Source: Haplodiscus bocki
Lineage: Eukaryota
Length of the DNA: 64,000 nucleotides
Reading direction: 5' to 3'
Assembly: GCA_965655095.1 (NCBI GenBank)
Contig: OZ296654.1
Span: 12,462,001 to 12,526,000, forward strand
In this document: positions 1 through 23,500 of the stretch, one piece after another
Position numbering within the stretch: the first letter of the stretch is position 1
How the letters are laid out: every line of letters begins with the position of its first letter
The notes under the pieces: generated by a model
What the model was told of the DNA's origin: nothing
The model's input: the letters and a program-made list of their open reading frames with translations, nothing else
Databases searched by the model: none
Position numbers and translations under genes: made by a program

Positions 1-1089
1 TATCGCTACAGTATATGATGGAAATGAAGCCCAAATGTACAATTAAGTGAGTTCAAGTAACTCTCATGCAAACAGTCTGTAAGCGTTTCCTCTCAGTTTG
101 ATTTGTTGGATGGTAATGTTTCAAGACGGCGCTTCAATATAGAGCTCAAAGAGAGCGTCCTCAGGCATAATTTAAACCGGGCTGGTAATATAATGAAGAA
201 TCTGCATCAATGGACAAACTGTGCTTTTCAGAAGCAGGATGTTCGAACACTTGTCTAAAAATTTGAATCCAGTTCGTACATACTGATCAACTTTATCCTC
301 GTTCTAACGTAGACTTCTGTTTGAGGAAATCAATATCAACATGCAACAAGTTTTTGATCACGAAAACAAATGATGAAAACTACCAAAGTTAAACGGAACT
401 TGAGAACGTAGGAGGGCAGGTGAATTGCGACGCAACTTGTTTGAAACATAGAGTGCAAATATGTCAGTTCCTTTCTTCAAGTAGGTTTTTCCCAATTTTG
501 TGAGTTGATGCAATTCGCGTCAGTTTACGTACACATATAAAGCGTTTGGCATTTTTGTTAGTACGAGTTGAATCAGAAAGATTCAGATTTGGGCCGTCCA
601 CTAGGATTTTTTTTACATGACCCGGTGTGTTGTCTACCGCTAGTCTGCAAATAACTCGCTAACTCAAAATTATACAAGACTACTTATTATCACTATTTGA
701 TCCTACAGCCTTTCCATTGAGAACCGAATGCAGACTCAACCGAGAAACGTACCCCTTCTATATTTGTAGTTACTTAAACAAAGAAGCGCTTACTTGATGG
801 ACATTATTTTGTCGAAATCGAGATACGGCAAGTAGCACAAAACTACTCATGAAGATCCTGTGATAAATATTGTGGACAAAAAGTCCTATTCCAAGTTAAA
901 ATGCGACTTTGAGCTCGGGTTTGCTGATATAATAAACTTTGCATATTAGCGGTGTCTCTTGTAACCTTTGTTGTGGATTTTGGCAATTAACTTTTCAAGA
1001 ATTTGTGAAACCAATCTTATTCTTTTCATTTCTTTGATTACTTTGAGCAATTGATTACTATGACTCTGCGTTTCTAATTTCAATCCCAT

Positions 1090-2110
1090 TCAGAATGTTT
1101 GAAAAAGGCAATCAATATTTTTGGAAAACGTGAGGTCTCCAGTTTTACCGGAAAAACTCATGCGGACTGGAAGTGGGCTCAGGCTTTGGCACATTGAACG
1201 CCACTCCAAGTCGAAGCAGGTATTCTTACGTGTTGTCCTAGTATATTCTGACAACTCCAGAGCTGAAAATGTAGAAAATCCAGAAGCAAAACACTCTGCG
1301 TTTCCCGGTGACTTCAAATTGAATCCGTGATGTGCTGAAGGAGTCGGAAGACGGCGTGAACTCGACTTCTTTCGCTCTTCATGTTGGTTTCTCGTTTTTC
1401 GGTTCCTAGCCTCTTATTGCAGCAAGAAAGAGTGTTTTTCGAAAGGAGCTGTGTGCTCGAGCAGTTTTTCAAAAACAAAAACCAGGTCAACATTGTTGGC
1501 GGCACCTATAAGTGGGAGCTCAACGCGTATTGATTGTTCCAGGACAAAGGAACTGACAGAATTGATTGGTTTTTGATGATTGGCTGCGCAGTCTTTGGCT
1601 GTTGCTGGCTTGTGATTTATTTTGAAAAATTACTGGATTAATAGCTTCATGCAATGAGTTATATGAGAAGCAAAAGAAATCAGAGCAAGTTGTCAGACTT
1701 CTTGCTCTGATTTCTTTTACTTCTTCGGAGTTGTTTTCGGTTTTGAAATTTATCGCTACACTATATGATGCAAATGAAGCCCAAATGTACAATTAAATGA
1801 GTTCAAGTAACTCTCATGCAAACAGTCTGTAAGCGTTTCCTCTCAGTTTGACTTGTTGCTTGTTAATGTTTCAAGACGGCGCTTCAATAGAGAGCTCAAA
1901 GAGAGCGTGCTCAGGCATAAAATAAACCGGGCTGGGAATATAATGAAGAATCTGCATCAGTGAACCAACTGTGCTTTTCAAAACCAGGATGTTCGAACAC
2001 TTGTCTAAAAATTTGAATCCAGCTCGTACATACTGATCAACTTTATCCTCGTTCTAACGTAGACTTCTGTTTGAGGAAATCAATATCAATATGCAACAAG
2101 TTTTTGATCA
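1090..2110 (-). pseudogene. Decayed protein-coding sequence within the monomer (representative copy; present in every unit), product unknown
   Basis: Minus-strand ORF fragments tile the monomer (1792-1520, 1505-1314, 1317-1090, plus a largely open frame from ~2050 to 1793). Relic-versus-modern blocks show synonymous and conservative changes in minus-strand frames, e.g. EQSIRVELPLIGA / ENPIRVELSVTGA and IPSPVYFMPEHALFELYIEAPS / LPSSVCFIAEKAVLALLIKAPT. Confidence 0.55.
1563..1586 (-). promoter_or_regulatory. Paired CCAAT (NF-Y-like) boxes, repeated in every monomer (representative copy)
   Basis: The minus strand reads CAGCCAATCA-TCAAA-AACCAATCA, with cores 14 bp apart (ATTGG at 1565 and 1579). 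Motif match only; function is not shown. Confidence 0.25.
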
Positions 2111-4242
2111 CGAAAACAAATGATGAAAACTACCAAAGTTAAACGGAACTTGAGAACGTAGGAGGGCAGGTGAATTGCGACGCAACTTGTTTGAAACATA
2201 GAGTGCAAATATGTCAGTTCCTTTCTTCAAGTAGGTTTTTCCCAATTTTGTGAGTTGATGCAATTCGCGTCAGTTTACGTACACATATAAAGCGTTTGGC
2301 ATTTTTGTTAGTACGAGTTGAATCAGAAAGATTCAGATTTGGGCCGTCCACTAGGATTTTTTTTACATGACCCGGTGTGTTGTCTACCGCTAGTCTGCAA
2401 ATAACTCGCTAACTCAAAATTATACAAGACTACTTATTATCACTATTTGATCCTACAGCCTTTCCATTGAGAACCGAATGCAGACTCAACCGAGAAACGT
2501 ACCCCTTCTATATTTGTAGTTACTTAAACAAAGAAGCGCTTACTTGATGGACATTATTTTGTCGAAATCGAGATACGGCAAGTAGCACAAAACTACTCAT
2601 GAAGATCCTGTGATAAATATTGTGGACAAAAAGTCCTTTTCCAAGTTAAAATGCGACTTTGAGCTCGGGTTTGCTGATATAATAAACTTTGCATATTAGC
2701 GGTGTCTCTTGTAACCTTTGTTGTGGATTTTGGCAATTAACTTTTCAAGAATTTGTGAAACCAATCTTATTCTTTTCATTTCTTTGATTACTTTGAGCAA
2801 TTGATTACTATGACTCTGCGTTTCTAATTTCAATCCCATTCAGAATGTTTGAAAAAGGCAATCAATATTTTTGGAAAACGTGAGGTCTCCAGTTTTACCG
2901 GAAAAACTCATGCGGACTGGAAGTGGGCTCAGGCTTTGGCACATTGAACGCCACTCCAAGTCGAAGCAGGTATTCTTACGTGTTGTCCTAGTATATTCTG
3001 ACAACTCCAGAGCTGAAAATGTAGAAAATCCAGAAGCAAAACACTCTGCGTTTCCCGGTGACTTCAAATTGAATCCGTGATGTGCTGAAGGAGTCGGAAG
3101 ACGGCGTGAACTCGACTTCTTTCGCTCTTCATGTTGGTTTCTCGTTTTTCGGTTCCTAGCCTCTTATTGCAGCAAGAAAGAGTGTTTTTCGAAAGGAGCT
3201 GTGTGCTCGAGCAGTTTTTCAAAAACAAAAACCAGGTCAACATTGTTGGCGGCACCTATAAGTGGGAGCTCAACGCGTATTGATTGTTCCAGGACAAAGG
3301 AACTGACAGAATTGATTGGTTTTTGATGATTGGCTGCGCAGTCTTTGGCTGTTGCTGGCTTGTGATTTATTTTGAAAAATTACTGGATTAATAGCTTCAT
3401 GCAATGAGTTATATGAGAAGCAAAAGAAATCAGAGCAAGTTGTCAGACTTCTTGCTCTGATTTCTTTTACTTCTTCGGAGTTGTTTTCGGTTTTGAAATT
3501 TATCGCTACACTATATGATGCAAATGAAGCCCAAATGTACAATTAAATGAGTTCAAGTAACTCTCATGCAAACAGTCTGTAAGCGTTTCCTCTCAGTTTG
3601 ACTTGTTGCTTGTTAATGTTTCAAGACGGCGCTTCAATAGAGAGCTCAAAGAGAGCGTGCTCAGGCATAAAATAAACCGGGCTGGGAATATAATGAAGAA
3701 TCTGCATCAGTGAACCAACTGTGCTTTTCAAAACCAGGATGTTCGAACACTTGTCTAAAAATTTGAATCCAGCTCGTACATACTGATCAACTTTATCCTC
3801 GTTCTAACGTAGACTTCTGTTTGAGGAAATCAATATCAACATGCAACAAGTTTTTGATCACGAAAACAAATGATGAAGACTACCAAAGTTAAACGGAACT
3901 TGAGAACGTAGGAGGGCAGGTGAATTGCGACGCAACTTGTTTGAAACATAGAGTGCAATATGTCAGTTCCTTTCTTCAAGTAGGTTTTTCCCAATTTTGT
4001 GAGTTGACTGCTGTTGCTTCATAAATTCCCCCTTATCTCTCACTAGCAGTATCTGTGAGTCAGTCCCCAGAGACTTACATTGGCAATTCAATTTAGTTGA
4101 ACGCAATTTGTTTCCCTTTGTAATCTGAATAATTGAATATTTCATTTTCTATTTTCCTTTCATCGCTCGTAAAGCCCTTGCTTTTGAACTGACGCCTTCC
4201 TTGTTCGCGGAGCCAGCAAGGCAGCCAAAATGGAGAGATAAA

Positions 4243-4332
4243 AGCTCTAAAGACTCGTTCTGTTTTTAAACAATAATTGAAGCGCGGCTGCCGCTGCTTT
4301 AATGGAGTGTTTGTCACGCGCCGTTTAGAGCT
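4243..4332. other. Imperfect ~90-nt hairpin (nested inverted repeats)
   Basis: AGCTCTAAA 4243-4251 / TTTAGAGCT 4324-4332; AAACA 4268-4272 / TGTTT 4308-4312; ATTGAAGC 4276-4283 / GCTTTAAT 4296-4303 (one G-U pair); GCGG 4284-4287 / CCGC 4291-4294; loop CTG. Confidence 0.6.
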
Positions 4333-4830
4333 AACCGAAAATTAGAATCAAATATTTTTTGCATATTCAACCTCTATTTCCTCTTACTACATGCTCTGCG
4401 ACAGCTCCAAGTTGTGAATGTGATGATCCAAGCTCTGCTTTGAGAACATTTTGCGTCGAAATTTGTTGTTTTTCAGAATGGTTTTTGTTTTAAACTACCT
4501 TTTTAAAATTGTTTCGTCCAGAGATTAATCAAATGAGTTTTCTTGTTTCGCGTCATAACATCTCTCGTATTCATATCGCAAGGAAAATCATTCCTCCATT
4601 CGGAAGACTTTTCCTGTTCGTTTGCCTATTCTTGTTGCGTTAACTATTGATCTAATTCCTTCCTTTTTTGCTAGTGTATGGATCATTTAAACTGCCAAGT
4701 TGAAATATATATCTCTACTTTCTGAGACACTGATTGTATGTTGTATGGTAAATTTTTAGGACCTTAGTAGAATTTTTTTTCTGAAATTCTGCAAGAAAAG
4801 GAAAATATTCGAGAATGTTGTTTTCTTTTT

Positions 4831-5070
4831 CATATTCCCCTCGATGCGTAGAAATGAAGTTTTGACAACAGCAGCCAAAAATAATTCGCTGAAGGCCCGA
4901 ATAAAACCTGAAACTCTTCGTTTTTTTCTCCTCAAAATGTTCGACTGGGGACGTAGAATGTAGTTTGAACAACACCAAGTGACAAGTTTTTCGCCAGGAA
5001 ATCGAAAAAAAATTCAAAGTCGCTCAAAATGTTTGGCTGGACACATGAAAATGAGTTTTGAGAACACCAG
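4831..5070 (+). repeat. Three degenerate direct copies of a ~45-60-bp motif (approx. CTCAAAATGTTnnnCTGGACACGTAGAATGnAGTTTTGACAACACC), spaced ~92-100 bp
   Basis: 4831 CATATTCCCCTCGATGCGTAGAAATGAAGTTTTGACAACAGC; 4931 CTCAAAATGTTCGACTGGGGACGTAGAATGTAGTTTGAACAACACC; 5023 CTCAAAATGTTTGGCTGGACACATGAAAATGAGTTTTGAGAACACC. Confidence 0.75.
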
Positions 5071-5304
5071 TTTTTGTCTAAAATAGTACTTACTGAGCTA
5101 AAAGCGAGCCTCCGGAGACCGTAGGATGCTTCCTTTTCTTGAACTTTTCTGCAATTTCCTTTTTGAGCTTTTTCTGACCCATAGTCGGGAGAAAGCGTCG
5201 CGATGCTGGTGCACCTTTTTTGGGTGTAGATAGATTTAGACGAAATATTTTGATGGGTTTTCTCAATGATTATTAGAACATGCCTCCAAAAGCATAGGCT
5301 GTTC

Positions 5305-5341
5305 ATGATCAAAAGTAGTTTGTAATGACCAAAGTAGTTTT
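5305..5341 (+). repeat. Short tandem duplication, period 20 bp
   Basis: ATGATCAAAAGTAGTTTGTA is followed by ATGACCAAAGTAGTTTT. Confidence 0.7.
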
Positions 5342-5699
5342 CTCTTCAACTGCCTGTTCTATTTTTTTTTTCATGCAGGGATCAGTCGGATTTTTTTCTG
5401 CAGGTAGGTGTAGTTCCAGCATTCTCGGTGATCTTTTCGCAGACAATTTATGTGGCGAATATTTTTTATTTCAGTTGGAGTTGAATTTCTTGATTTTCCG
5501 AAATATTTTTTTTCAAGTACCTCTTCCAATTCTTTCACCCAGGGCTCAATCAATAGTCTTTTTTGTTTAGATTGATACAAACGCTACCAATTTCCAGTTG
5601 TAATGTTTTTTTTCATAGTTTGTTGTGAAATCGGGTCGTGAGTTTCTTCCAACAGATATCGTAGTGTTCTTACAACGATATCAAACATTAGTTGATTCA

Positions 5700-6789
5700 G
5701 CAGTGATTGAGTTCAAGTTAGACTTGCGTAACAGAACTTTCGGCGTTTTTCTCTCATTTTCAAGTGTCAATTGATAATTTTTAGTCGGCGCTTTTATTAA
5801 GAGCGCGAGGACAGCCTTTTCAGCTATGAAACAAACACTGCTGGGAAGAATTTCAGCATCAATAGACAAAATACGCCTTGCAAAAGTGGAATCTTTGACT
5901 TCTCGTAATAAAAACAGTCCAGCTCGTACATTGTGATCAAGTTTTTCCATACTCTAACACAGACATTTGTTTGAGGAAATCATTCCTATCATCAACATGC
6001 AACAAAATGTTTAACTCGAAAAAAAATGAACAAGGCTACCAAAAATGAAGGGAACTTAAAGGAACGTAAGAGGTCAGATGCATTGCGAAGCAGCTTAATT
6101 TGAAACAATTTGGGCACCAGTGGAGCTGGAACTTGTATATTGAATAAGATTTCCTCCGAGAGTTTCTGATGACCATATTCTGTATCAGTATTTAATTATA
6201 GGAAACGTTTGGCGTATTTTCACACCAGATGAATTGGAGAAACTCAGGTTTGTTCGACCCAATTGGAGCTTGTGTTTATTTGATCGGGGTTTCATTTTTC
6301 TTAGCTTTATTGCATTAGTTACTAACTAAAACCTTATCCTACATGATACATCTATGGTAAAGCGTTCAGCATGAATCCGCAAAAAATCTGAAACTTTCCC
6401 TACTGGAATGGAAGATACGCAATTTACCAAATTAAAATTTGGGAAAACTAGGTTTTTTTACCTTGTTCAAATCTATGCCACTCATCTTTGGTCTACTTCA
6501 CTTTCAGCGCCAGCCAACTCAAACCAAGCTGAGATAAAACACGGTGATAGCGCTCTCTGTGTGCCGTCCGCATTGAGTCGGAACGCTGCGTTACGGCGAC
6601 TGCTTTCGCCGATAATATCCGTTTCTCCCATTTTTGACATCGCAGCTCCTTCATGCAGGAACACTAAACTGTGTTTTCCGAAGGAGCTGTTTTTTCAGAC
6701 CATCGGGTGCAAAACGTAGTTCCACAGTTTTATTCGGCGCCTGTAACCGAAAGCTCGACTCGTATTGGATTCTCCGACGCAGACAAACG
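5700..6789. repeat. Highly diverged relic monomer of the satellite, lacking a counterpart of monomer positions ~700-1150
   Basis: Collinear exact blocks shared with the monomer: TGAGTTCAAGT (5708), CGGCGCTT (5786), TCCAGCTCGTACA (5918), TGTTTGAGGAAATCA (5968), ATCAACATGCAACAA (5991), CGTTTGGC (6206), GAGTCGGAA (6575), AAGGAGCTGT (6681). It joins the modern monomer in register at GACAGAATTG (6790). Confidence 0.92.
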
Positions 6790-9447
6790 GACAGAATTGA
6801 TTGGTTTTTGATGATTGGCTGCGCAGTCTTTGGCTGCTCCTGGCTTGAAAATTATTTTGAAAAATTACTGGATTATTAGCTTCATGCAATGAGTTATATG
6901 AGAAGTAAAAGAAATCTGGGCAAGTTGTCAGACTTCTTGCTCTGATTTCTTTTACTTCTTCGGAGTTGTCTTCGGTTTTGAAATTTATCGCTACAGTATA
7001 TGATGGAAATGAAGCCCAAATGTACAATTAAGTGAGTTCAAGTAACTCTCATGCAAACAGTCTGTAAGCGTTTCCTCTCAGTTTGATTTGTTGGATGGTA
7101 ATGTTTCAAGACGGCGCTTCAATATAGAGCTCAAAGAGAGCGTCCTCAGGCATAATTTAAACCGGGCTGGTAATATAATGAAGAATCTGCATCAATGGAC
7201 AAACTGTGCTTTTCAGAAGCAGGATGTTCGAACACTTGTCTAAAAATTTGAATCCAGTTCGTACATACTGATCAACTTTATCCTCGTTCTAACGTAGACT
7301 TCTGTTTGAGGAAATCAATATCAACATGCAACAAGTTTTTGATCACGAAAACAAATGATGAAAACTACCAAAGTTAAACGGAACTTGAGAACGTAGGAGG
7401 GCAGGTGAATTGCGACGCAACTTGTTTGAAACATAGAGTGCAAATATGTCAGTTCCTTTCTTCAAGTAGGTTTTTCCCAATTTTGTGAGTTGATGCAATT
7501 CGCGTCAGTTCACGTACACATATAAAGCGTTTGGCATTTTTGTTAGTACGAGTTGAATCAGAAAGATTCAGATTTGGGCCGTCCACTAGGATTTTTTTTA
7601 CATGACCCGGTGTGTTGTCTACCGCTAGTCTGCAAATAACTCGCTAACTCAAAATTATACAAGACTACTTATTATCACTATTTGATCCTACAGCCTTTCC
7701 ATTGAGAACCGAATGCAGACTCAACCGAGAAACGTACCCCTTCTATATTTGTAGTTACTTAAACAAAGAAGCGCTTACTTGATGGACATTATTTTGTCGA
7801 AATCGAGATACGGCAAGTAGCACAAAACTACTCATGAAGATCCTGTGATAAATATTGTGGACAAAAAGTCCTATTCCAAGTTAAAATGCGACTTTGAGCT
7901 CGGGTTTGCTGATATAATAAACTTTGCATATTAGCGGTGTCTCTTGTAACCTTTGTTGTGGAATTTGGCAAATAACTTTTCAAGAATTTGTGAAACCAAT
8001 CTTATTCTTTTCATTTCTTTGATTACTTTGAGCAATTGATTACTATGACTCTGCGTTTCTAATTTCAATCCCATTCAGAATGTTTGAAAAAGGCAATCAA
8101 TATTTTTGGAAAACGTGAGGTCTCCAGTTTTACCGGAAAAACTCATGCGGACTGGAAGTGGGCTCAGGCTTTGGCACATTGAACGCCACTCCAAGTCGAA
8201 GCAGGTATTCTTACGTGTCGTCCTAGTATATTCTGAGACCTCCAAACCTGAAAATGTAGAAAATCCAGAAGCAAAGCACTCTGCGTTCCCCGGTGAATTA
8301 AATTGAATCCGTGATGTGCTGAAGGAGTCGGAAGACGGCGTGAACTCGACTTTTTCCGCTCTTCATGTTGGTTTTTCGTTTTTCGCTTCCTAGCCTCTTA
8401 TTGCAGCAAGAAAGTGTGTTTTTTGAATTGAGCTGTGTGCTCGAGCAAATTTTCAGAACTAAAAACCTAGGTCAACATTGTTGGCGGTACCTATAAGTGG
8501 GAGCTCAACGCGTATTCATTGTTCCAGGACAAAGTAACTGATAGAATTGATTGGTTTTTGATGATTGGCTGCGCAGTCTTTGGCTGTTACTGGCTTGGGA
8601 TTTATTTTGAAAGTTTACGGGATTAATAGCTTCATGCAATGAGTTATATGAGAAGTAAAAGAAGTCAGAGCAAGTTGTCAGACTTCCTGCTCTGATTTCT
8701 TTTACTTCTTAGGAGTTGTCTTCGGTTTTGAAATTTATCGCTACAGTATATGATAGAAATGAAGCCCAAATGTACAATTAAATCAGTTCAAGTAACTCTC
8801 ATGCAAACAATCTGTAAGCGTTTCCTCTCAGTTTGATTTGTTGGATGTTAATGTTTCAAGACGGCGCTTCAATATAGAGCTCAAAGAGAGCGTGCTCAGG
8901 CATAAAATAAACCGGGCTGGGAATATAATGATGATTCTGCATCAGTGGACAAACTGTGCTTTTCAGAAGCAGGATGTTCGAACACTTGTCTAAAAATTTG
9001 AATCCAGCTCGTACATACTGGTCAACTTTATCCTCGTTCTAACGTAGACTTCTGTTTGAGGAAATCAATATCAACATGCAACAAGTTTTTGATCACGAAA
9101 ACAAATGATGAAGACTACCAAAGTTAAACGGAACTTGAGAACGTAGGAGGGCAGGTGAATTGCGACGCAACTTGTTTGAAACATAGAGTGCAATATGTCA
9201 GTTCCTTTCTTCCAGTAGGTTTTTCCCAATTTTGTGAGTTGATGCAATTCGCGTCAGTTTACGTACACCTAAATCGTTTGGCATTTTTGTTAGTACGAAT
9301 TGAATAATAAAAATTCAGATTTGGGCCGTCCACTCGAATTTTTTAACATGACCCGGTGTGTTGTCTACCGCTAGTCTGCAAATGACTCGCTAACTCAAAA
9401 TTATACAAGACAACTTCTTATCACTGTTTGATCCTACAGCCTTTCCA

Positions 9448-9726
9448 TTAAGAACCGAATGCATACTCAACGGAGAAACGTACCCTTTCTATATTTGTAG
9501 TTACTAAAACGAAGCGCTTACTTGATGGACGTCTTTTTATCGAAATCGAGATACGGAAAGTAGCACAAAACCCTTCATGAAGATCCTGTGATAAATATTG
9601 TGGACAATAAGTCTTATCCCAAGTTAAAATGCGACTTTGAGCTCGAGTTTGCTGATATAATAATTTTTGCAAATTAGCGGTGTCTCTTCTAACCTTTGCT
9701 ATGGAATTTGGCAAATAAATTTTCAA
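9448..9726 (-). pseudogene. 92-aa ORF fragment in a divergent monomer, with a weak DDE-transposase-like DxxY...RxxxExxFG pattern
   Basis: The translation ...ILTWDKTYCPQYLSQDLHE...ERVRFSVEYAFGS resembles the second-D and E motifs of IS4/IS5/PIF-Harbinger-type transposases by eye only. No first D or TIRs identified. Confidence 0.25.
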
Positions 9727-10249
9727 GAATTTGTGAAACCAATCTTCGACTTTTCATTTCTTTGTTTACTTTGAGCAATTGAATACTATGACACTGCCTT
9801 TCTAATTTCAATCCCCTCCAGAATGTTCAAAAATGTCAATCAATGTTTTTGGAAAACGTGAGTTCTCGAGTTTTACCGGAAAAACATGCGGACTGGAAGT
9901 GCGCTCAAGCTTTGGCACATTGAACGCCACTCCAAGTCGAAGCAGGTATTCTTACGTGTTGTCCTAGTATATTCTGACAACTCCAGAGCTGAAAATGTAG
10001 AAAATCCAGAAGCAAAACACTGTGCGTTTCCCGGTGACTTCAAATTGAATCCGTGATGTGCTGAAGGAGTCGGAAGACGGCGTGAACTCGACTTCTTTCG
10101 CTCTTCATGTTGGTTTCTCGTTTTTCGGTTCCTAGCCTCTTATTGCAGCAAGAAAGAGTGTTTTTCGAAAGGAGCTGTGTGCTCGAGCAGTTTTTCAAAA
10201 ACAAAAACCAGGTCAACATGGTTGGCGGCACCTATAAGTGGGAGCTCAA

Positions 10250-13200
10250 CGCGTATTGATTGTTCCAGGACAAAGGAACTGACAGAATTGATTGGTTTTT
10301 GATGATTGGCTGCGCAGTCTTTGGCTGTTGCTGGCTTGTGATTTATTTTGAAAAATTACTGGATTAATAGCTTCATGCAATGAGTTATATGAGAAGCAAA
10401 AGAAATCAGAGCAAGTTGTCAGACTTCTTGCTCTGATTTCTTTTACATCTTCGGTTTTGAAATTTATCGCTACACTATATGATGCAAATGAAGCCCAAAT
10501 GTACAATTAAATGAGTTCAGGGAACTCTCATGCAAACAGTCTGTAAGCGTTCCCTCTCAGTTTGACTTGTTGGATGTTAATGTTTTAAGACGGCGCTTCA
10601 ATATAGAGCTCAAAGAGAGCGTCCTCAGGCATAAATTGAACCGGGCTGGTAATATAATGAAGAATCTGCATCAGTGGACAAACTGTGCTTTTCAGAAGAA
10701 GGATGTTCGAACACTTGTCTAAAAATTTGAATCCAGCTCGTACATACTGCTCAACTTTATCCTCGTTCTAACGTAGACTTCTGTTTGAGGAGATCAATAT
10801 CAACATGCAACACTTTTTTGAACACGAAAACAAATGATGACGACTACCAAAATTGAACGGAACTTGAGAACGTAGGAGGCCAGGTGAATTGCGATGCAAC
10901 TTGTTTGAAACATAGAGTGCAATATGTCAGTTCCTTTCTTCAAGTAGGTTTTTCCCAATTTTGTGAGTTGATGCAATTCGAGTCAGTTTAAGTACACATA
11001 AAGCGTTTGGCATTTTTGTTAGTACGAGTTGAATGAGAAAGATTCAGATTTGGGCCGTCCACTAGGATTTTTTTACATGACCCGGCGTGTTGTCTACCGC
11101 TAGTCTGCAAATAACTCGCTAACTCAAAATTATACAAGACAACTTTCTATCACTATTTGATCCTACAGCCTTTCCATAGAGAACCGAATGCAGATTCAAC
11201 CGAGAAACGTACCCCTTCTATATTTGTAGTTACTTAAACAAAGAAGCGCTTACTTGATGGACATTATTTTATCGAAATCGAGATACGGCAAGTAGCACAA
11301 AACTACTCATGAAGATCCTGTGATAAATATTGTGGACAAAAAGTCCTATTCCAAGTTAAAATGAGACTTTGAGCTCGGGTTTGCTGATATAATAAACTTT
11401 GCATATTAGCGGTGTCTCTTCTAACCTTTGTTATGGAAATTGGCAATTAAATTTTCAAGAATTTGTGAAACCAATCTAATTCTTTTCATTTCTTTGATTA
11501 CTTTGAGCAATTGATTACAATGACACTGCGTTTCTAATTTCAATCCCATTCAGAATGTTTGAAAATGGCAATCAATATTTTTGGAAGACATGAGGTCTCG
11601 AGTTTTACCGGAAAAACTCATGCGGACTGGAAGTGGGCTCAAGCTTTGGCACATTGAACGCCACTCCAAGTCGAAGCAGGTATTCTTACGTGTTGTCCTA
11701 GTATATTCTGACAACTCCAGAGCTGAAAATGTAGAAAATCCAGAAGCAAAACACTGTGCGTTTCCCGGTGACTTCAAATTGAATCCGTGATGTGCTGAAG
11801 GAGTCGGAAGACGGCGTGAACTCGACTTCTTTCGCTCTTCATGTTGGTTTCTTGTTTTTCGGTTCCTAGCCTCTTATTGCAGCAAGAAAGAGTTTTTCGA
11901 AAGGAGCTGTGTGCTCGAGCAGTTTTTCAAAAACAAAAACCAGGTCAACATTGTTGGCGGCACCTATAAGTGGGAGCTCAACGCGTATTGATTGTTCCGG
12001 GACAAAGGAACTGACAGAATTGATTGGTTTTTGATGATTGGCTGCGCAGTCTTTGGCTGTTGCTGGCTTGTGATTTATTTTGAAAAATTACTGGATTATT
12101 AGCTTCATGCAATGAGTTATATGAGAAGCAAAAGAAATCAGAGCAAGTTGTCAGACTTCTTGCTCTGATTTCTTTTACATCTTCGGTTTTGAAATTTATC
12201 GCTACACTATATGATGCAAATGAAGCCCAAATGTACAATTAAATGAGTTCAGGGAACTCTCATGCAAACAGTCTGTAAGCGTTCCCTCTCAGTTTGACTT
12301 GCTGGATGTTAATGTTTTAAGACGGCGCTTCAATATAGAGCTCAAAGAGAGCGTCCTCAGGCATAAATTGAACCGGGCTGGTAATATAATGAAGAATCTG
12401 CATCAGTGGACAAACTGTGCTTTTCAGAAGAAGGATGTTCGAACACTTGTCTAAAAATTTGAATCCAGCTCGTACATACTGCTCAACTTTATCCTCGTTC
12501 TAACGTAGACTTCTGTTTGAGGAGATCAATATCAACATGCAACACGTTTTTGAACACGAAAACAAATGATGACGACTACCAAAATTGAACGGAACTTGAG
12601 AATGTAGGAGGACAGGTGAATTGCGATGCAACTTGTTTGAAACATAGAGTGCAATATGTCAGTTCCTTTCTTCAAGTAGGTTTTTCCCAATTTTGTGAGT
12701 TGATGCAATTCGAGTCAGTTTAAGTACACATAAAGCGTTTGGCATTCTTGTCAGTACGAGTTGAATGAGAAAGATTCAGATTTGGGCCGTCCACTAGGAT
12801 TTTTTTACATGACCCGGTGTGTTGTCTACCGCTAGTCTGCAAATAACTCGCTAACTCAAAATTATACAAGACAACTTTATATCACTATTTGATCCTACAG
12901 CCTTTCCATTGAGAACCGAATGCAGACTCAACCGAGAAACGTACCCCTTCTATATTTGTAGTCGCTTAAACAAAGAAGCGCTTACTTGATGGACATTGTT
13001 TTATCGAAATCGAGATACGGCAAGTAGCACAAAACTACTCATGAAGATCCTGTGATGAATATTGTGGACAAAAAGTCCTATTCCAAGTTAAAATGCGACT
13101 TTGAGCTCGGGTTTGCTGATATAATAAACTTTGCATATTAGCGGTGTCTCTTTTAACCTTTGTTATGGACTTTGGCAATTAAATTTTCAAGAATTTGTGA

Positions 13201-16200
13201 AACCAATCTAATTCTTTTCATTTCTTTGATTACTTGGAGCAATTGATTACTATGACACTGCGTTTCTAATTTCAATCCCATTCAGAATGTTTGAAAATGG
13301 CAATCAATATTTTTGGAAGACGTGAGGTCTCGAGTTTTACCGGAAAAACATGCGGACTGGAAGTGGGCTCAAGCTTTGGCACATTGAACGCCACTCCAAG
13401 TCGAAGCAGGTATTCTTACGTGTTGTCCTAGTATATTCTGACAACTCCAGAGCTGAAGATGTAGAAAATCCAGAAGCAAAACACTCTGCGTTTCCCGGTG
13501 ACTTCAATTTCAATCCGTGATGTGCTGAAGGAGTCGGAAGACTTCGTGAACTCGACTTCTTCCGCTCTTCATGTTGGTTTCTCGTTTTTCGGTTCCTAGC
13601 CTCTTATTGCAGCAAGAATGTGTTTTTCGAAAGGAGCTGTGTGCTCGAGCAATTTTTCAAAAACAAAAACCAGGTCAACATTGTTGGCGGCACCTATAAG
13701 TGGGAGCTCAATGCGTATTGATTGTTCCAGGACAAAGGAACTGACAGAATTGATTGGTTTTTGATGATTGGCTGCGCAGTCTTTGGCTGTTGCTGGCTTG
13801 TGATTTTTTTTGAAAAATTACTGGATTAATAGCTTCATGCAATGAGTTATATGAGAAGCAAAAGAAATCAGAGCAAGTTGTCAGACTTCTTGCTCTGATT
13901 TCTTTTACTTCTTCGGAGTTGTCTTCGGTTTTGAAATTTATCGCTACACTATATGATGCAAATGAAGCCCAAATGTACAATTAAATGAGTTCAAGTAACT
14001 CTCATGCAAACAGTCTGTAAGCGTTTCCTCTCAGTTTGACTTGTTGGATGTTAATGCTTTAAGACGGCGCTTCAATATAGAGCTCAAAGAGAGCGTCCTC
14101 AGGCATAAATTGAACCGGGCTGGTAATATAATGAAGAATCTGCATCAGTGGACAAACTGTGCTTTTCAGAAGAAGGATGTTCGAACACTTGTCTAAAAAT
14201 TTGAATCCAGCTCGTACATACTGCTCAACTTTATCCTCGTTCTAACGTAGACTTCTGTTTGAGGAGATCAATATCAACATGCAACACGTTTTTGAACACG
14301 AAAACAAATGATGACGACTACCAAAATTGAACGGAACTTGAGAACGTAGGAGGCCAGGTGAATTGCGATGCAACTTGTTTGAAACATAGAGTGCAATATG
14401 TCAGTTCCCTTCTTCAAGTAGGTTTTTCCCAATTTTGTGAGTTGATGCAATTCGAGTCAGTTTAGGTACACATAAAGCGTTTGGCATTTTTGTTAGTACG
14501 AGTAGAATGAGAAAGATTCAGATTTGGGCCGTCCACTAGGATTTTTTTACATGACCCGGTGTGTTGTCTACCGCTAGTCTGCAAATAACTCGCTACCTCA
14601 AAATTATACAAGACAACTTTATATCACTATTTGATCCTACAGCCTTTCCATTGAGAACCGAATGCAGACTCAACCGAGAAACGTACCCCTTCTATATTTG
14701 TAGTTACTTAAACAAAGAAGCGCTTACTTGATGGACATTATTTTATCGAAATCGAGATACGGCAAGTAGCACAAAACTACTCATGAAGATCCTGTGATGA
14801 ATATTGTGGACAAAAAGTCCTATTCCAAGTTAAAATGCGACTTTGAGCTCGGGTTTGCTGATATAATAAACTTTGCATATTAGCGGTGTCTCTTCTAACC
14901 TTTGTTATGGAATTTGGCAATTAAATTTTCAAGAATTTGTGAAACCAATCTAATTCTTTTCATTTCTTTGATTACTTTGAGCAGTTGATTACAATGACAC
15001 TGCGTTTCTAATTTCAATCCCATTCAGAATGTTTGAAAATGGCAATCAATATTTTTGGAAGACGTGAGGTCTCGAGTTTTACCGGAAAAACTCATGCGGA
15101 CTGGAAGTGGACTCAAGCTTTGGCACATTGAACGCCACTCCAAGTCGAAGCAGGTATTCTTACGTGTTGTCCTAGTATATTCTGACAACTCCAGAGCTGA
15201 AAATGTAGAAAATCCAGAAGCAAAACACTGTGCGTTTCCCGGTGACTTCAATTTCAATCCGTGATGTGCTGAAGGAGTCGGAAGACGGCGTGAACTCGAC
15301 TTCTTTCGCTCTTCATGTTGGTTTCTTGTTTTTCGGTTCCTAGCCTCTTATTGCAGCAAGAAAGAGTTTTTCGAAAGGAGCTGTGTGCTCGAGCAGTTTT
15401 TCAAAAACAAAAACCAGGTCAACATTGTTGGCGGCACCTATAAGTGGGAGCTCAACGCGTATTGATTGTTCCGGGACAAAGGAACTGACAGAATTGATTG
15501 GTTTTTGATGATTGGCTGCGCAGTCTTAGGCTGTTGCTGGCTTGTGATTTATTTTGAAAAATTACTGGATTATTAGCTTCATGCAATGAGTTATATGAGA
15601 AGCAAAAGAAATCAGAGCAAGTTGTCAGACTTCTTGCTCTGATTTCTTTTACATCTTCGGTTTTGAAGTTTATCGCTACACTATATGATGCAAATGAAGC
15701 CCAAATGTACAATTAAATGAGTTCAAGTAACTCTCATGCAAACAGTCTGTAAGCGTTTCCTCTCAGTTTGACTTGTTGGATGTTAATGTTTTAAGACGGC
15801 GCTTCAATATAGAGCTCAAAGAGAGCGTCCTCAGGCATAAATTGAACCGGGCTGGTAATATAATGAAGAATCTGCATCAGTGGACAAACTGTGCTTTTCA
15901 GAAGAAGGATGTTCGAACACTTGTCTAAAAATTTGAATCCAGCTCGTACATACTGCTCAACTTTATCCTCGTTCTAACGTAGACTTCTGTTTGAGGAGAT
16001 CAATATCAACATGCAACACGTTTTTGAACACGAAAACAAATGATGACGACTACCAAAATTGAACGGAACTTGAGAACGTAGGAGGCCAGGTGAATTGCGA
16101 TGCAACTTGTTTGAAACATAGAGTGCAATATGTCAGTTCCCTTCTTCAAGTAGGTTTTTCCCAATTTTGTGAGTTGATGCAATTCGAGTCAGTTTAGGTA

Positions 16201-19200
16201 CACATAAAGCGTTTGGCATTTTTGTTAGTACGAGTAGAATGAGAAAGATTCAGATTTGGGCCGTCCACTAGGATTTTTTTACATGACCCGGTGTGTTGTC
16301 TACCGCTAGTCTGCAAATAACTCGCTAACTCAAAATTATACAAGACAACTTTATATCACTATTTGATCCTACAGCCTTTCCATTGAGAACCGAATGCAGA
16401 CTCAACCGAGAAACGTACCCCTTCTATATTTGTAGTTACTTAAACAAAGAAGCGCTTACTTGATGGACATTATTTTATCGAAATCGAGATACGGCAAGTA
16501 GCACAAAACTACTCATGAAGATCCTGTGATGAATATTGTGGACAAAAAGTCCTATTCCAAGTTAAAATGCGACTTTGAGCTCGGGTTTGCTGATATAATA
16601 AACTTTGCATATTAGCGGTGTCTCTTCTAACCTTTGTTATGGAATTTGGCAATTAAATTTTCAAGAATTTGTGAAACCAATCTAATTCTTTTCATTTCTT
16701 TGATTACTTTGAGCAATTGATTACAGTGACACTGCGTTTCTAATTTCAATCCCATTCAGAATGTTTGAAAATGGCAATCAATATTTTTGGAAGACGTGAG
16801 GTCTCGAGTTTTACCGGAAAAACTCATGCGGACTGGAAGTGGACTCAAGCTTTGGCACATTGAACGCCACTCCAAGTCGAAGCAGGTATTCTTACGTGTT
16901 GTCCTAGTATATTCTGACAACTCCAGAGCTGAAAATGTAGAAAATCCAGAAGCAAAACACTGTGCGTTTCCCGGTGACTTCAAATTGAATCCGTGATGTG
17001 CTGAAGGAGTCGGAAGACGGCGTGAACTCGACTTCTTTCGCTCTTCATGTTGGTTTCTTGTTTTTCGGTTCCTAGCCTCTTATTGCAGCAAGAAAGAGTT
17101 TTTCGAAAGGAGCTGTGTGCTCGAGCAGTTTTTCAAAAACAAAAACCAGGTCAACATTGTTGGCGGCACCTATAAGTGGGAGCTCAACGCGTATTGATTG
17201 TTCCGGGACAAAGGAACTGACAGAATTGATTGGTTTTTGATGATTGGCTGCGCAGTCTTTGGCTGTTGCTGGCTTGTGATTTATTTTGAAAAATTACTGG
17301 ATTATTAGCTTCATGCAATGAGTTATATGAGAAGCAAAAGAAATCAGAGCAAGTTGTCAGACTTCTTGCTCTGATTTCTTTTACATCTTCGGTTTTGAAA
17401 TTTATCGCTACACTATATGATGCAAATGAAGCCCAAATGTACAATTAAATGAGTTCAAGTAACTCTCATGCAAACAGTCTGTAAGCGTTTCCTCTCAGTT
17501 TGACTTGTTGGATGTTAATGTTTTAAGACGGCGCTTCAATATAGAGCTCAAAGAGAGCGTCCTCAGGCATAAATTGAACCGGGCTGGTAATATAATGAAG
17601 AATCTGCATCAGTGGACAAACTGTGCTTTTCAGAAGAAGGATGTTCGAACACTTGTCTAAAAATTTGAATCCAGCTCGTACATACTGCTCAACTTTATCC
17701 TCGTTCTAACGTAGACTTCTGTTTGAGGAGATCAATATCAACATGCAACACGTTTTTGAACACGAAAACAAATGATGACGACTACCAAAATTGAACGGAA
17801 CTTGAGAATGTAGGAGGCCAGGTGAATTGCGATGCAACTTGTTTGAAACATAGAGTGCAATATGTCAGTTCCTTTCTTCAAGTAGGTTTTTCCCAATTTT
17901 GTGAGTTGATGCAATTCGAGTCAGTTTAAGTACACATAAAGCGTTTGGCATTTTTGTCAGTACGAGTTGAATGAGAAAGATTCAGATTTGGGCCGTCCAC
18001 TAGGATTTTTTTACATGACCCGGTGTGTTGTCTACCGCTAGTCTGCAAATAACTCGCTAACTCAAAATTATACAAGACAACTTTATATCACTATTTGATC
18101 CTACAGCCTTTCCATTGAGAACCGAATGCAGACTCAACCGAGAAACGTACCCCTTCTATATTTGTAGTCACTTAAACAAAGAAGCGCTTACTTGATGGAC
18201 ATTGTTTTATCGAAATCGAGATACGGCAAGTAGCACAAAACTACTCATGAAGATCCTGTGATGAATATTGTGGACAAAAAGTCCTATTCCAAGTTAAAAT
18301 GCGACTTTGAGCTCGGGTTTGCTGATATAATAAACTTTGCATATTAGCGGTGTCTCTTCTAACCTTTGTTATGGACTTTGGCAATTAAATTTTCAAGAAT
18401 TTGTGAAACCAATCTAATTCTTTTCATTTCTTTGATTACTTGGAGCAATTGATTACTATGACACTGCGTTTCTAATTTCAATCCCATTCAGAATGTTTGA
18501 AAATGGCAATCAATATTTTTGGAAGACGTGAGGTCTCGAGTTTTACCGGAAAAACATGCGGACTGGAAGTGGGCTCAAGCTTTGGCACATTGAACGCCAC
18601 TCCAAGTCGAAGCAGGTATTCTTACGTGTTGTCCTAGTATATTCTGACAACTCCAGAGCTGAAGATGTAGAAAATCCAGAAGCAAAACACTCTGCGTTTC
18701 CCGGTGACTTCAATTTCAATCCGTGATGTGCTGAAGGAGTCGGAAGACGGCGTGAACTCGACTTCTTCCGCTCTTCATGTTGGTTTCTCGTTTTTCGGTT
18801 CCTAGCCTCTTATTGCAGCAAGAATGTGTTTTTCGAAAGGAGCTGTGTGCTCGAGCAATTTTTCAAAAACAAAAACCAGGTCAACATTGTTGGCGGCACC
18901 TATAAGTGGGAGCTCAATGCGTATTGATTGTTCCAGGACAAAGGAACAGACAGAATTGATTGGTTTTTGATGATTGGCTGCGCAGTCTTTGGCTGTTGCT
19001 GGCTTGTGATTTTTTTTTGAAAAATTACTGGATTAATAGCTTCATGCAATGAGTTATTTGAGAAGCAAAAGAAATCAGAGCAAGTTGTCAGACTTCTTGC
19101 TCTGATTTCTTTTACTTCTTCGGAGTTGTCTTCGGTTTTGAAATTTATCGCTACACTATATGATGCAAATGAAGCCCAAATGTACAATTAAATGAGTTCA

Positions 19201-20500
19201 AGTAACTCTCATGCAAACAGTCTGTAAGCGTTTCCTCTCAGTTTGACTTGTTGGATGTTAATGTTTTAAGACGGCGCTTCAATATAGAGCTCAAAGAGAG
19301 CGTCCTCAGGCATAAATTGAACCGGGCTGGTAATATAATGAAGAATCTGCATCAGTGGACAAACTGTGCTTTTCAGAAGAAGGATGTTCGAACACTTGTC
19401 TAAAAATTTGAATCCAGCTCGTACATACTGCTCAACTTTATCCTCGTTCTAACGTAGACTTCTGTTTGAGGAGATCAATATCAACATGCAACACGTTTTT
19501 GAACACGAAAACAAATGATGACGACTACCAAAATTGAACGGAACTTGAGAACGTAGGAGGCCAGGTGAATTGCGATGCAACTTGTTTGAAACATAGAGTG
19601 CAATATGTCAGTTCCCTTCTTCAAGTAGGTTTTTCCCAATTTTGTGAGTTGATGCACTTCGAGTCAGTTTAAGTACACATAAAGCGTTTGGCATTTTTGT
19701 TAGTACGAGTAGAATGAGAAAGATTCAGATTTGGGCCGTCCACTAGGATTTTTTTACATGACCCGGTGTGTTGTCTACCGCTAGTCTGCAAATAACTCGC
19801 TAACTCAAAATTATACAAGACAACTTTATATCACTATTTGATCCTACAGCCTTTCCATTGAGAACCGAATGCAGACTCAACCGAGAAACGTACCCCTTCT
19901 ATATTTGTAGTTACTTAAACAAAGAAGCGCTTACCTGATGGACATTGTTTTATCGAAATCGAGATACGGCAAGTAGCACAAAACTACTCATGAAGATCCT
20001 GTGATGAATATTGTGGACAAAAAGTCCTATTCCAAGTTAAAATGCGACTTTGAGCTCGGGTTTGCTGATATAATAAACTTTGCATATTAGCGGTGTCTCT
20101 TCTAACCTTTGTTATGGACTTTGGCAATTAAATTTTCAAGAATTTGTGAAACCAATCTAATTCTTTTCATTTCTTTGATTACTTGGAGCAATTGATTACT
20201 ATGACACTGCGTTTCTAATTTCAATCCCATTCAGAATGTTTGAAAATGGCAATCAATATTTTTGGAAGACGTGAGGTCTCGAGTTTTACCGGAAAAACTC
20301 ATGCGGACTGGAAGTGGGCTCAAGCTTTGGCACATTGAACGCCACTCCAAGTCGAAGCAGGTATTCTTACGTGTTGTCCTAGTATATTCTGACAACTCCA
20401 GAGCTGAAGATGTAGAAAATCCAGAAGCAAAACACTCTGCGTTTCCCGGTGACTTCAATTTCAATCCGTGATGTGCTGAAGGAGTCGGAAGACGGCGTGA
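10250..20500. repeat. Imperfect trimer higher-order repeat, period ~5206 bp
   Basis: The 12-bp deletion follows a del/del/full pattern twice (10447, 12179 | 15653, 17385). The 2-bp deletion GGAAAAACATG occurs at 13349 and 18555. Anchor offsets are 5206-5207. Confidence 0.75.
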
Positions 20501-23500
20501 ACTCGACTTCTTCCGCTCTTCATGTTGGTTTCTCGTTTTTCGGTTCCTAGCCTCTTATTGCAGCAAGAATGTGTTTTTCGAAAGGAGCTGTGTGCTCGAG
20601 CAATTTTTCAAAAACAAAAACCAGGTCAACATTGTTGGCGGCACCTATAAGTGGGAGCTCAATGCGTATTGATTGTTCCAGGACAAAGGAACAGACAGAA
20701 TTGATTGGTTTTTGATGATTGGCTGCGCAGTCTTTGGCTGTTGCTGGCTTGTGATTTTTTTTGAAAAATTACTGGATTAATAGCTTCATGCAATGAGTTA
20801 TTTGAGAAGCAAAAGAAATCAGAGCAAGTTGTCAGACTTCTTGCTCTGATTTCTTTTACTTCTTCGGAGTTGTCTTCGGTTTTGAAATTTATCGCTACAC
20901 TATATGATGCAAATGAAGCCCAAATGTACAATTAAATGAGTTCAGGGAACTCTCATGCTAACAGTCTGTAAGCGTTCCCTCTCAGTTTGACTTGTTGGAT
21001 GTTAATGTTTTAAGACGGCGCTTCAATATAGAGCTCAAAGAGAGCGTCCTCAGGCATAAAATAAACCGGGCTGGGAATATAATGAAGAATCTGCATCAGT
21101 GAACCAACTGTGCTTTTCAAAACCAGGATGTTCGAACACTTGTCTAAAAATTTGAATCCAGCTCGTACATACTGCTCAACTTTATCCTCGTTCTAACGTA
21201 GACTTCTGTTTGAGGAGATCAATATCAACATGCAACACGTTTTTGAACACGAAAACAAATGATGACGACTACCAAAATTGAACGGAACTTGAGAACGTAG
21301 GAGGCCTGGTGAATTGCGATGCAACTTGTTTGAAACATAGAGTGCAATATGTCAGTTCCCTTCTTCAAGTAGGTTTTTCCCAATTTTGTGAGTTGATGCA
21401 ATTCGAGTCAGTTTAAGTACACATAAAGCGTTTGGCATTTTTGTTAGTACGAGTAGAATGAGAAAGATTCAGATTTGGGCCGTCCACTAGGATTTTTTTA
21501 CATGACCCGGTGTGTTGTCTACCGCTAGTCTGCAAATAACTCGCTAACTCAAAATTATACAAGACAACTTTATATCACTATTTGATCCTACAGCCTTTCC
21601 ATTGAGAACCGAATGCAGACTCAACCGAGAAACGTACCCCTTCTATATTTGTAGTTACTTAAACAAAGAAGCGCTTACTTGATGGACATTATTTTATCGA
21701 AATCGAGATACGGCAAGTAGCACAAAACTACTCATGAAGATCCTGTGATAAATATTGTGGACAAAAAGTCCTATTCCAAGTTAAAATGAGACTTTGAGCT
21801 CGGGTTTGCTGATATAATAACTTTGCATATTAGCGGTGTCTCTTCTAACCTTTGTTATGGAATTTGGCAATTAAATTTTCAAGAATTTGTGAAACCAATC
21901 TAGTTCTTTTCATTTCTTTGATTACTTTGAGCAATTGATTACAATGACACTGCGTTTCTAATTTCAATCCCATTCAGAATGTTTGAAAATGGCAATCAAT
22001 ATTTTTGGAAGACGTGAGGTCTCGAGTTTTACCGGAAAAACTCATGCGGACTGGGAGTGGGCTCAAGCTTTGGCACATTGAACGCCACTCCAAGTCGAAG
22101 CAGGTATTCTTACGTGTTGTCCTAGTATATTCTGACAACTCCAGAGCTGAAAATGTAGAAAATCCAGAAGCAAAACACTGTGCGTTTCCCGGTGACTTCA
22201 AATTGAATCCGTGATGTGCTGAAGGAGTCGGAAGACGGCGTGAACTCGACTTCTTTCGCTCTTAATGTTGGTTTCTCGTTTTTCGGTTCCTAGCCTCTTA
22301 TTGCAGCAAGAAAGAGTTTTTCGAAAGGAGCTGTGTGCTCGTGCAGTTTTTCAAAAACAAAAACCAGGTCAACATTGTTGGCGGCACCTATAAGTGGGAG
22401 CTCAACGCGTATTGATTGTTCCGGGACAAAGGAACTGACAGAATTGATTGGTTTTTGATGATTGGCTGCGCAGTCTTTGGCTGTTGCTGGCTTGTGATTT
22501 TTTTTGAAAAATTACTGGATTAATAGCTTCATGCAATGAGTTATTTGAGAAGCAAAAGAAATCAGAGCAAGTTGTCAGACTTCTTGCTCTGATTTCTTTT
22601 ACTTCTTCGGAGTTGTCTTCGGTTTTGAATTTTATCGCTACAGTATATGATAGAAATGAAGCCCAAATGTACAATTAAATCAGTTCAAGTAACTCTCATG
22701 CAAACGATCTGTAAGCGTTCCCTCTCAGTTTGACTTGTTGGATGTTAATGTTTTAAGACGGCGCTTCAATATAGAGCTCAAAGAGAGCGTCCTCAGGCAT
22801 AAAATAAACCGGGCTGGGAATATAATGAAGAATCTGCATCAGTGAACCAACTGTGCTTTTCAAAACCAGGATGTTCGAACACTTGTCTAAAAATTTGAAT
22901 CCAGCTCGTACATACTGCTCAACTTTATCCTCGTTCTAACGTAGACTTCTGTTTGAGGAGATCAATATCAACATGCAACACGTTTTTGAACACGAAAACA
23001 AATGATGACGACTACCAAAATTGAACGGAACTTGAGAACGTAGGAGGCCTGGTGAATTGCGATGCAACTTGTTTGAAACATAGAGTGCAATATGTCAGTT
23101 CCCTTCTTCAAGTAGGTTTTTCCCAATTTTGTGAGTTGATGCAATTCGAGTCAGTTTAAGTACACATAAAGCGTTTGGCATTTTTGTTAGTACGAGTAGA
23201 ATGAGAAAGATTCAGATTTGGGCCGTCCACTAGGATTTTTTTACATGACCCGGTGTGTTGTCTACCGCTAGTCTGCAAATAACTCGCTAACTCAAAATTA
23301 TACAAGACAACTTTATATCACTATTTGATCCTACAGCCTTTCCATTGAGAACCGAATGCAGACTCAACCGAGAAACGTACCCCTTCTATATTTGTAGTTA
23401 CTTAAACAAAGAAGCGCTTACTTGATGGACATTATTTTATCGAAATCGAGATACGGCAAGTAGCACAAAACTACTCATGAAGATCCTGTGATAAATATTG

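What the first reader, a model, noticed from the sequence alone, without database searches (positions are those of the whole stretch)
5700..6789. Fossil monomer: a very old copy of the satellite sits in register at the array edge
Seen: what looks like unique sequence is a collinear, heavily diverged homolog of monomer positions ~47-700 (5700-6342) and ~1150-1553 (6390-6789). It switches sharply to modern sequence at 6790 without a register shift. The relic-to-modern offset is 1325 bp (TGAGTTCAAGT at 5708 vs 7033) rather than ~1745. Established: concerted evolution homogenises array interiors and spares the edges. Inference: the tandem arrangement is far older than the near-identical modern copies suggest, and 6790 marks the limit of homogenisation. 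There are no intermediate-divergence copies, which points to a saltatory re-amplification.
Basis: partly seen in the sequence, partly recalled or inferred. Interest (0 to 1): 0.7.

Follow-up and report, generated by a model that had tools for sequence, protein, structure and literature searches.

The report
Duplicated fossil monomer at satellite edge
A badly decayed old copy of a 1.74-kb tandem repeat does sit in register beside the modern copies, but this is the ordinary "array-end relic" pattern, and the copy in this window was carried about 4 kb into the array by a recent 7-kb duplication.

Summary
The relic is real. Window 5704-6287 matches monomer positions 44-620 (nhmmer E 1.6e-57, 72% identity). 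Window 6572-6789 matches positions 1334-1553 (E 3e-15, 68%). The switch to modern sequence falls at 6788-6790, in register.

The relic is not at the array edge in this window. Window 4008-10974 is the second copy of a 6985-bp tandem duplication. That duplication copied the true left edge, which lies just upstream of the window: flank, relic and 2.4 monomers. The new joint at 4007|4008 cuts a dispersed repeat.

The array is a single locus of about 87 kb. Its right edge carries its own in-register relic at about 75% identity. A second public assembly has the same flank, relic and switch point. It has only about 4.4 monomers and lacks the duplication.

An ancient tandem arrangement with spared edges is therefore supported. 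"Limit of homogenisation" and "saltatory re-amplification" are not shown: modern monomers differ by up to 7%.

This is an ordinary array-end relic. The scan found the same kind elsewhere in this genome (s1-354081).

The parts
1..4007 (+). Array part of duplication copy A: two 1750-bp monomers plus cons 1-507. It ends at the new joint.
   Evidence: Monomer starts at 1, 1751 and 3501. Aligns 96.7% to interior monomers up to 4007. Copy A spans window -2979..4011.
4006..4009 (.). Non-homologous joint of the 6985-bp tandem duplication. Array cons 507 (..GTTGA) is joined to mid-repeat flank (CTGCTG..), with 2-bp microhomology GA.
   Evidence: Direct comparison of the joint with both parental sequences. 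The dispersed repeat continues at least 1.5 kb further left only in the upstream copy.
4008..4405 (+). 3' end of a high-copy dispersed repeat, unclassified, truncated by the joint.
   Evidence: At least 40 scored genomic copies at 78-85% identity out of 3677 candidates. Read-contig depth is about 900 times that of its neighbours.
4406..5703 (.). Non-satellite flank. It contains a second dispersed-repeat fragment (about 4932-5219) and a 23-bp micro-tandem at 5636-5682.
   Evidence: No nhmmer hit to the monomer at E<=10. Dispersed hits on other chromosomes. TRF result.
5704..6287 (+). Relic block 1, an old homolog of monomer positions 44-620. It includes a decayed BIR-like exon remnant on the minus strand.
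   Evidence: nhmmer E 1.6e-57; 72% identity; K2P 0.35; ts:tv 57:97. tblastn to the P1 ORF.
6288..6571 (.). 284 bp with no detectable homology, sitting where about 713 bp of the monomer (cons 621-1333) should be.
   Evidence: nhmmer finds nothing. Smith-Waterman score 11 against a shuffle mean of 11.4.
6572..6789 (+). Relic block 2, an old homolog of monomer positions 1334-1553.
   Evidence: nhmmer E 3e-15 when tested alone; 68% identity; K2P 0.41.
6790..64000 (+). Modern array, starting in register at cons about 1553. It runs on to window coordinate 86996 beyond the window.
   Evidence: The first two monomers (6986, 8736) are the most divergent, at 95.6% and 94.2% to the consensus.
4008..10974 (+). 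Copy B of the 6985-bp tandem duplication (flank + relic + 2.4 monomers). Copy A is window -2977..4007.
   Evidence: Megablast 97.4% over 6993 columns at offset 6985. A-B divergence is 0.5% in flank+relic and rises to 2.2-5.1% in the monomers.

Best explanation
The stretch 5704-6789 is what remains of an old copy of the 1.74-kb repeat. It lay at the left end of an ancient short tandem arrangement of at least three copies. Unequal exchange and gene conversion kept renewing and expanding the inner copies into today's array of about 50 monomers (about 87 kb). The outermost partial copies on both sides stayed outside the exchange zone and decayed neutrally to about 70% identity on the left and about 75% on the right. 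Transposon fragments accumulated beside them.

The sharp in-register switch at 6788-6790 marks where an old exchange or conversion tract ended.

Much later, a non-homologous joint with 2-bp microhomology tandemly duplicated 6985 bp. That is four monomer periods, comprising 2.8 kb of flank with the relic plus 2.4 monomers. The window therefore shows a second copy of the edge embedded in the array.

Shown: the homology, the register, relics at both edges, the duplication, and conservation in a second assembly.
Inferred: the exchange mechanisms, the order of events, and that the duplication arose from pairing that was out of register by four monomers.
For: - Relic homology and the sharp switch.
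- The substitution spectrum is unbiased (ts:tv about 0.6, all 12 types present), as expected for old neutral decay.
- The array is a single locus at C7:12461805-12548996. Nothing array-like lies in the 40 kb upstream.
- Right-edge relic: cons about 1718-1744 then 1-354 at about 75%, in register apart from a 26-bp deletion.
- Edge monomers are the most divergent modern ones.
- Dispersed repeats lie beside the relic.
- Second assembly (ENA ERZ26859043): the flank and relic are orthologous at 97.6% and 98.5-98.8%, with the same switch at cons about 1553. The right relic and right flank are also orthologous.
- Short-read contigs from 4 runs and 2 samples cover 5055-6819 with 0-1 differences.
- Duplication.
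Against: - There is a gap between about 7% and about 25% divergence with no graded series.
- The relic lacks any trace of cons 621-1333, so its 'collinearity' rests on two blocks.
- On 200-470 bp the relic is no closer to the modern monomer than a paralog 335 kb away is. The phylogeny is star-like, so descent inside one array is inferred from register, not from a tree.
- The 4007|4008 joint was not seen bridged by reads, because a high-copy repeat lies there. The second assembly lacks the duplication, so a false haplotype duplication in this assembly is not excluded.
Confidence: 0.8

Rival explanations
1. The relic was never an array member. It is one of several old local paralogs of a duplicon that carries a BIR-like exon, scattered over about 350 kb of this chromosome. 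It happened to lie next to the founder of the array and was later joined in register by a single unequal recombination or conversion event.
For: - Old copies sit at C7:12452780, 12638173 and 12795514-12800684, the last inverted and holding several partial copies.
- Distances among relic, paralog and modern monomer are star-like.
- In the exon-like part the relic groups slightly with the paralog.
Against: - Both array edges carry relics in the same orientation and in register. For unrelated neighbours this needs two coincidences of about 1 in 1744 each, or two recombination events between 70%-identical sequences.
- No homology between the relic's flank and the paralog locus extends beyond monomer sequence.
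Confidence: 0.1
2. The 6985-bp duplication, and with it the relic's position inside the array in this window, is an assembly artefact: two haplotypes of the array edge laid down in tandem.
For: - Copies A and B differ by only 0.5% in the unique part, which is allele-like.
- The second assembly has a single copy.
- The joint was not shown bridged by read contigs.
Against: - There is no N at the joint.
- The joint is a clean junction with 2-bp microhomology.
- The unit is 4.00 monomer periods long.
- The A and B array parts differ by 2-5%, not 0.5%.
- Reads of one sample carry A-type and B-type letters plus a third combination.
Confidence: 0.15
3. The relic is young. It is either a modern monomer overwritten by recent gene conversion from a diverged donor or damaged by hypermutation, or the 6789/6790 junction is a chimeric misassembly.
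For: Only the sharpness of the switch.
Against: - No donor exists. Whole-genome searches with the relic find only its own two copies and the modern monomers at about 70%.
- The substitution spectrum is unbiased.
- The same relic and junction occur in an independent assembly and in read contigs of two samples.
Confidence: 0.03

Closest known systems
Array-end relics and the edge effect of concerted evolution (McAllister & Werren 1999 'accretion model', as cited in PMC5411766 and PMC5615363)
   Same: The interior is homogeneous. The most divergent repeats and the transposon fragments lie at the array ends. The relics are contiguous and in register with the array.
   Different: The monomer is very long (1744 bp) and the locus is single and small. 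Divergence jumps from 7% or less to 25-32% instead of grading. The edge itself, with its non-satellite flank, has been duplicated into the array.
Layered pericentromeric alpha-satellite (old monomeric layers flanking homogeneous higher-order arrays; my own knowledge, not tested here)
   Same: Older, diverged copies flank a younger homogenised core on both sides.
   Different: Only one partial relic lies on each side. There is no evidence of centromere function. The unit is not nucleosome-sized.
Macrosatellites (single-locus arrays of kb-sized units that vary in copy number, e.g. D4Z4 and DXZ4; my own knowledge)
   Same: The unit is kb-sized, the locus is single, and copy number differs about 10-fold between two closely related assemblies.
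   Different: No intact gene lies in the unit, only a decayed exon-like remnant. The copy-number contrast rests on one metagenome-style assembly.
New composite repeats born at satellite junctions (Mravinac & Plohl, cited as ref. 200 in PMC5615363)
   Same: A junction segment (flank + relic + monomers) has been copied as one 6985-bp unit.
   Different: There are only two copies, with no sign of further amplification.

Membership tests
Array-end relic monomer | Statistically significant homology to the array's monomer | tested here: met
   nhmmer E 1.6e-57 and 3e-15. Shuffles give nothing.
Array-end relic monomer | Contiguous with the array, in the same orientation and in register | tested here: met
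   Cons 1537 (relic) runs into cons 1539 (modern) at 6788-6790. The same junction is present in a second assembly.
Array-end relic monomer | Lies at the physical end of the array | tested here: met
   Met for the upstream copy (window -1281..-196), which has no array in the 40 kb beyond it. The copy in the window is a duplicate lying 4 kb inside the array.
Array-end relic monomer | Much more diverged than interior copies, with neutral-looking substitutions | tested here: met
   28-32% against a median of 3.7% among modern monomers. ts:tv is about 0.6.
Array-end relic monomer | Graded increase of divergence toward the edge | tested here: inconclusive
   The first and last modern monomers are the most divergent at 93-96%. 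Nothing lies between about 7% and about 25%.
Accretion model (transposons accumulate at array ends) | Transposon fragments clustered at the edge and absent from the interior | tested here: met
   Dispersed repeats at 4008-4405 and about 4932-5219. The only non-repeated interruption in the window's array is this duplicated edge.
Macrosatellite | Unit over 1 kb, single locus, variable copy number | tested here: met
   1744-bp unit. All genomic hits lie on C7 at 12.46-12.55 Mb. There are 48 full monomers here and about 4.4 in the second assembly. Collapse in that assembly is not excluded.
Gene-derived satellite (BIR/IAP exon) | The monomer holds a recognisable remnant of a protein domain | tested here: inconclusive
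   - The paralog ORF hits Pfam BIR at 23.2 bits against a cut-off of 22.9.
- The monomer's minus strand at cons 145-333 is 43% identical to that ORF, with stops and lost Cys/His.
- A genome-wide BIR scan did not pick it up.
- The ORF has no relatives beyond one 92% ortholog.

The most novel reading that the evidence does not exclude
The window may have caught two things.

First, the first step in the birth of a composite higher-order repeat. Out-of-register pairing of the array by exactly four monomers was resolved by a microhomology joint in the non-satellite flank. That copied the flank, the fossil monomer and modern monomers as one 6985-bp unit.

Second, a 10-fold change in copy number (about 4.4 against about 50 monomers) between genomes only about 2.4% apart in the flanks. 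If real, it shows how fast such kb-unit arrays expand or collapse in a coral.
Probability: 0.3. Interest if true: 0.4.

Novelty: new member of a known kind. Interest (0 to 1): 0.25.

Why it matters
This is a clean, well-bracketed example of a satellite array. Both ends keep fossil copies, so the tandem state can be shown to be about ten times older (K about 0.3-0.4) than the coalescence of the present copies (about 0.04). The same boundary is shared by a second assembly.

It also shows that an "unhomogenised" edge is not immune to exchange, because a 7-kb duplication moved it into the array. It does not change the current understanding of concerted evolution. Its value is as a worked example, and as a caution that absence of intermediate copies does not prove saltatory amplification.

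Tried and rejected
- TRF found nothing, because its longest period is 500 bp.
- Rfam: only sub-threshold microRNA noise in 1-12000.
- Pfam on ten ORFs of the monomer, relic and flank: nothing. No monomer ORF starting with ATG and at least 70 aa long recurs.
- The relic's 103-aa ORF (6408-6716) has no protein relatives.
- Homology of 4008-5703 and of 6288-6571 to the monomer or to the paralog locus: none.
- Recent conversion from a donor was rejected, because no donor exists.
- Hypermutation was rejected, because the substitution spectrum is unbiased.
- A misassembled 6789/6790 junction was rejected.
- An expanded IAP gene cluster as the source was rejected. There are only two canonical BIR hits genome-wide, neither on this chromosome.
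- One fetch of ten genome stretches failed and was repeated in smaller batches.
- Read contigs could not test the 4007|4008 joint.

Full report
**What the window holds.** K-mer self-comparison shows a tandem repeat with a period of about 1731-1750 bp. It fills 1-4007 and 6790-64000. The only non-repeated stretch is 4008-6789. There are no N runs. Thirty-four full monomers give a 1744-bp consensus, and they are 94.2-99.0% identical to it.

**Checking the observation.** A profile of the monomers finds two significant collinear blocks in the "unique" stretch.
- Window 5704-6287 matches cons 44-620 (E 1.6e-57, 179 bits).
- Window 6572-6776 matches cons 1334-1535 (E 3e-15 when scored without the modern part). 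A pairwise alignment extends this block to 6789 and cons 1553.
- One hundred shuffles of each block gave no comparable score.
- Identity is 72% and 68%, K2P 0.35 and 0.41.
- Transitions to transversions are 57:97 and 24:37, and all twelve substitution types occur. This looks like old neutral decay, not hypermutation.
- The change to 95-100% identity falls at 6788-6790 and keeps the register, cons 1537 to 1539.

The stretch 6288-6571 has no detectable similarity to cons 621-1333. nhmmer finds nothing, and the Smith-Waterman score of 11 matches the shuffle mean of 11.4.

**The relic is not at the edge in this window.** The genome is about 1.5 Gb, and the window is C7:12462001-12526000.
- A search of the whole genome finds a second copy of 4008-6789, 99.5% identical and exactly 6985 bp upstream.
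- Window -2979..4011 aligns to 4006..10974 at 97.4%. The segment "2.8 kb of flank with the relic + 2.4 monomers" is therefore tandemly duplicated.
- No array sequence lies in the 40 kb beyond the upstream copy. The upstream copy is thus the true left edge.
- The first 400 bp of the flank belong to a high-copy dispersed repeat. In the upstream copy that repeat runs on for at least 1.5 kb further left. In the window it is cut off at 4008. The window copy is therefore the derived one.
- The joint reads array ..GTTGA | CTGCTG.. flank, with 2 bp of microhomology.
- The unit length of 6985 bp is 4.00 monomer periods. This is why monomer starts 3501 and 6986 are two periods apart. I infer, with about a 2% chance of coincidence, that the event arose while the arrays were paired four monomers out of register.
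- Divergence between the two copies is 0.50% in flank+relic, 0% in the first partial monomer, and then 2.2%, 4.6% and 5.1% in successive monomers. This suggests later exchange inside the array part.

**The whole locus.**
- The satellite is confined to one locus, C7:12461805-12548996. It has 48 full monomers plus partial ones.
- At the right end the last modern monomer fades at cons about 1640-1690. After a 26-bp deletion it is followed by cons about 1718-1744 and then 1-354 at about 75% identity. This is a second in-register relic.
- Further old fragments at 62-70% identity lie at window -9220 and +91440. Others lie 176 kb and 335 kb downstream. The last group is inverted and holds several partial copies.
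- That paralog locus carries an intact 161-codon ORF with a marginal Pfam BIR hit (23.2 bits against a cut-off of 22.9).
- The monomer's minus strand at cons 145-333 is a decayed homolog of that ORF, 43% identical, with stops and lost Cys/His.
- The ORF has no relatives apart from one 92% ortholog. A genome-wide BIR scan does not recover it. I therefore treat a "gene-derived" origin as a lead only.
- Distances among left relic, right relic, paralog and modern consensus are roughly star-like, JC 0.32-0.46 on the shared 200 bp.

**Independent assembly.** An ORF in the flank led to a 177-kb contig of ENA assembly ERZ26859043.
- It is collinear with the upstream flank. Its flank+relic is 97.6% identical, and the relic blocks are 98.5-98.8% identical.
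- It has the same switch at cons about 1553 and only one copy of the edge.
- After about 4.4 monomers it reaches the ortholog of the right relic (95.9%) and then the right flank. The junction there is out of register, cons 825 joined to about cons 5. That points to a deletion, or to collapse in that assembly.
- Its four monomers form one clade with support 0.999, next to our edge monomers. They are 94-95.5% identical to ours.
- Logan contigs of four runs from two samples cover 5055-6819 with 0-1 differences. That is 30 nt into the array.
- The 4007|4008 joint could not be checked, because it abuts a repeat at about 900-fold depth.

**Interpretation.** Both flanks are homologous to the monomer interior and in register. 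A tandem arrangement of at least three copies therefore predates the present array. The relics split from the modern lineage at K about 0.3-0.4. The modern copies differ from one another by about 0.04, and the two assemblies differ by about 0.024 in the flanks.

This is the known edge effect. Central repeats are homogenised more efficiently than terminal ones, and transposons accumulate at array ends (PMC5615363; PMC5411766, citing McAllister & Werren 1999).

- Exchange has crossed 6790, because a 7-kb duplication carried the relic inward.
- The lack of intermediates is equally expected from continuous turnover.
- Modern monomers differ by up to 6.8%, more than the inter-assembly flank divergence. 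The interior is therefore not one very recent burst.

**Verdict.** The feature is real and well supported, but ordinary. An earlier follow-up in this scan described the same kind of array-end relic elsewhere in this genome (s1-354081).

Noticed in passing
window 3416-3474, 6901-6959, 8651-8709 and every monomer (cons 1660-1718): Each monomer holds a 59-bp imperfect palindrome, 86-88% self-complementary. The 26-bp deletion at the right array edge (cons 1692-1717) and the out-of-register joint in the second assembly both lie at or near it. It may be a breakage hotspot.
   Followed up: partly
L026:5472-5957 (+) = C7:12797472-12797957; monomer cons 145-333, minus strand: A paralog locus 335 kb away has an intact 161-codon ORF with a marginal BIR-domain hit (C-x2-C...H-x6-C). 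A second exon-like copy, 68% identical, lies 3 kb away. The satellite monomer carries a decayed homolog. The ORF is an orphan apart from one 92% ortholog.
   Followed up: partly
C7:12452660-12453290, 12637815-12638571, 12795400-12796158: Three copies, about 87% identical, of a duplicon of about 760 bp. About 285 bp of it is homologous to monomer positions 539-821. This points to a younger local duplication family that overlaps the monomer's ancestry.
   Followed up: partly
L034 (reverse complement) 11862-19737, compared with window -196..86996: The second assembly has about 4.4 monomers where this genome has about 50, between orthologous relics and flanks that are only about 2.4% diverged. This is either rapid change in copy number or assembly collapse.
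   Followed up: partly
window 10465-64000: The array has local higher-order structure. Nearest-neighbour monomers sit at lags of 1, 2 or 3 units with 99.3-99.8% identity. Three length classes occur: about 1731, 1741-1745, and 1750 at the left edge.
   Followed up: partly
window 4008-4405, continuing upstream of window -2977: A high-copy dispersed repeat at least 1.9 kb long (3677 first-look candidates, read-contig depth about 900 times its neighbours). It was not classified.
   Followed up: no
window 5636-5682: A 23-bp unit repeated 2.1 times lies directly before the point where the relic's homology to the monomer begins.
   Followed up: no
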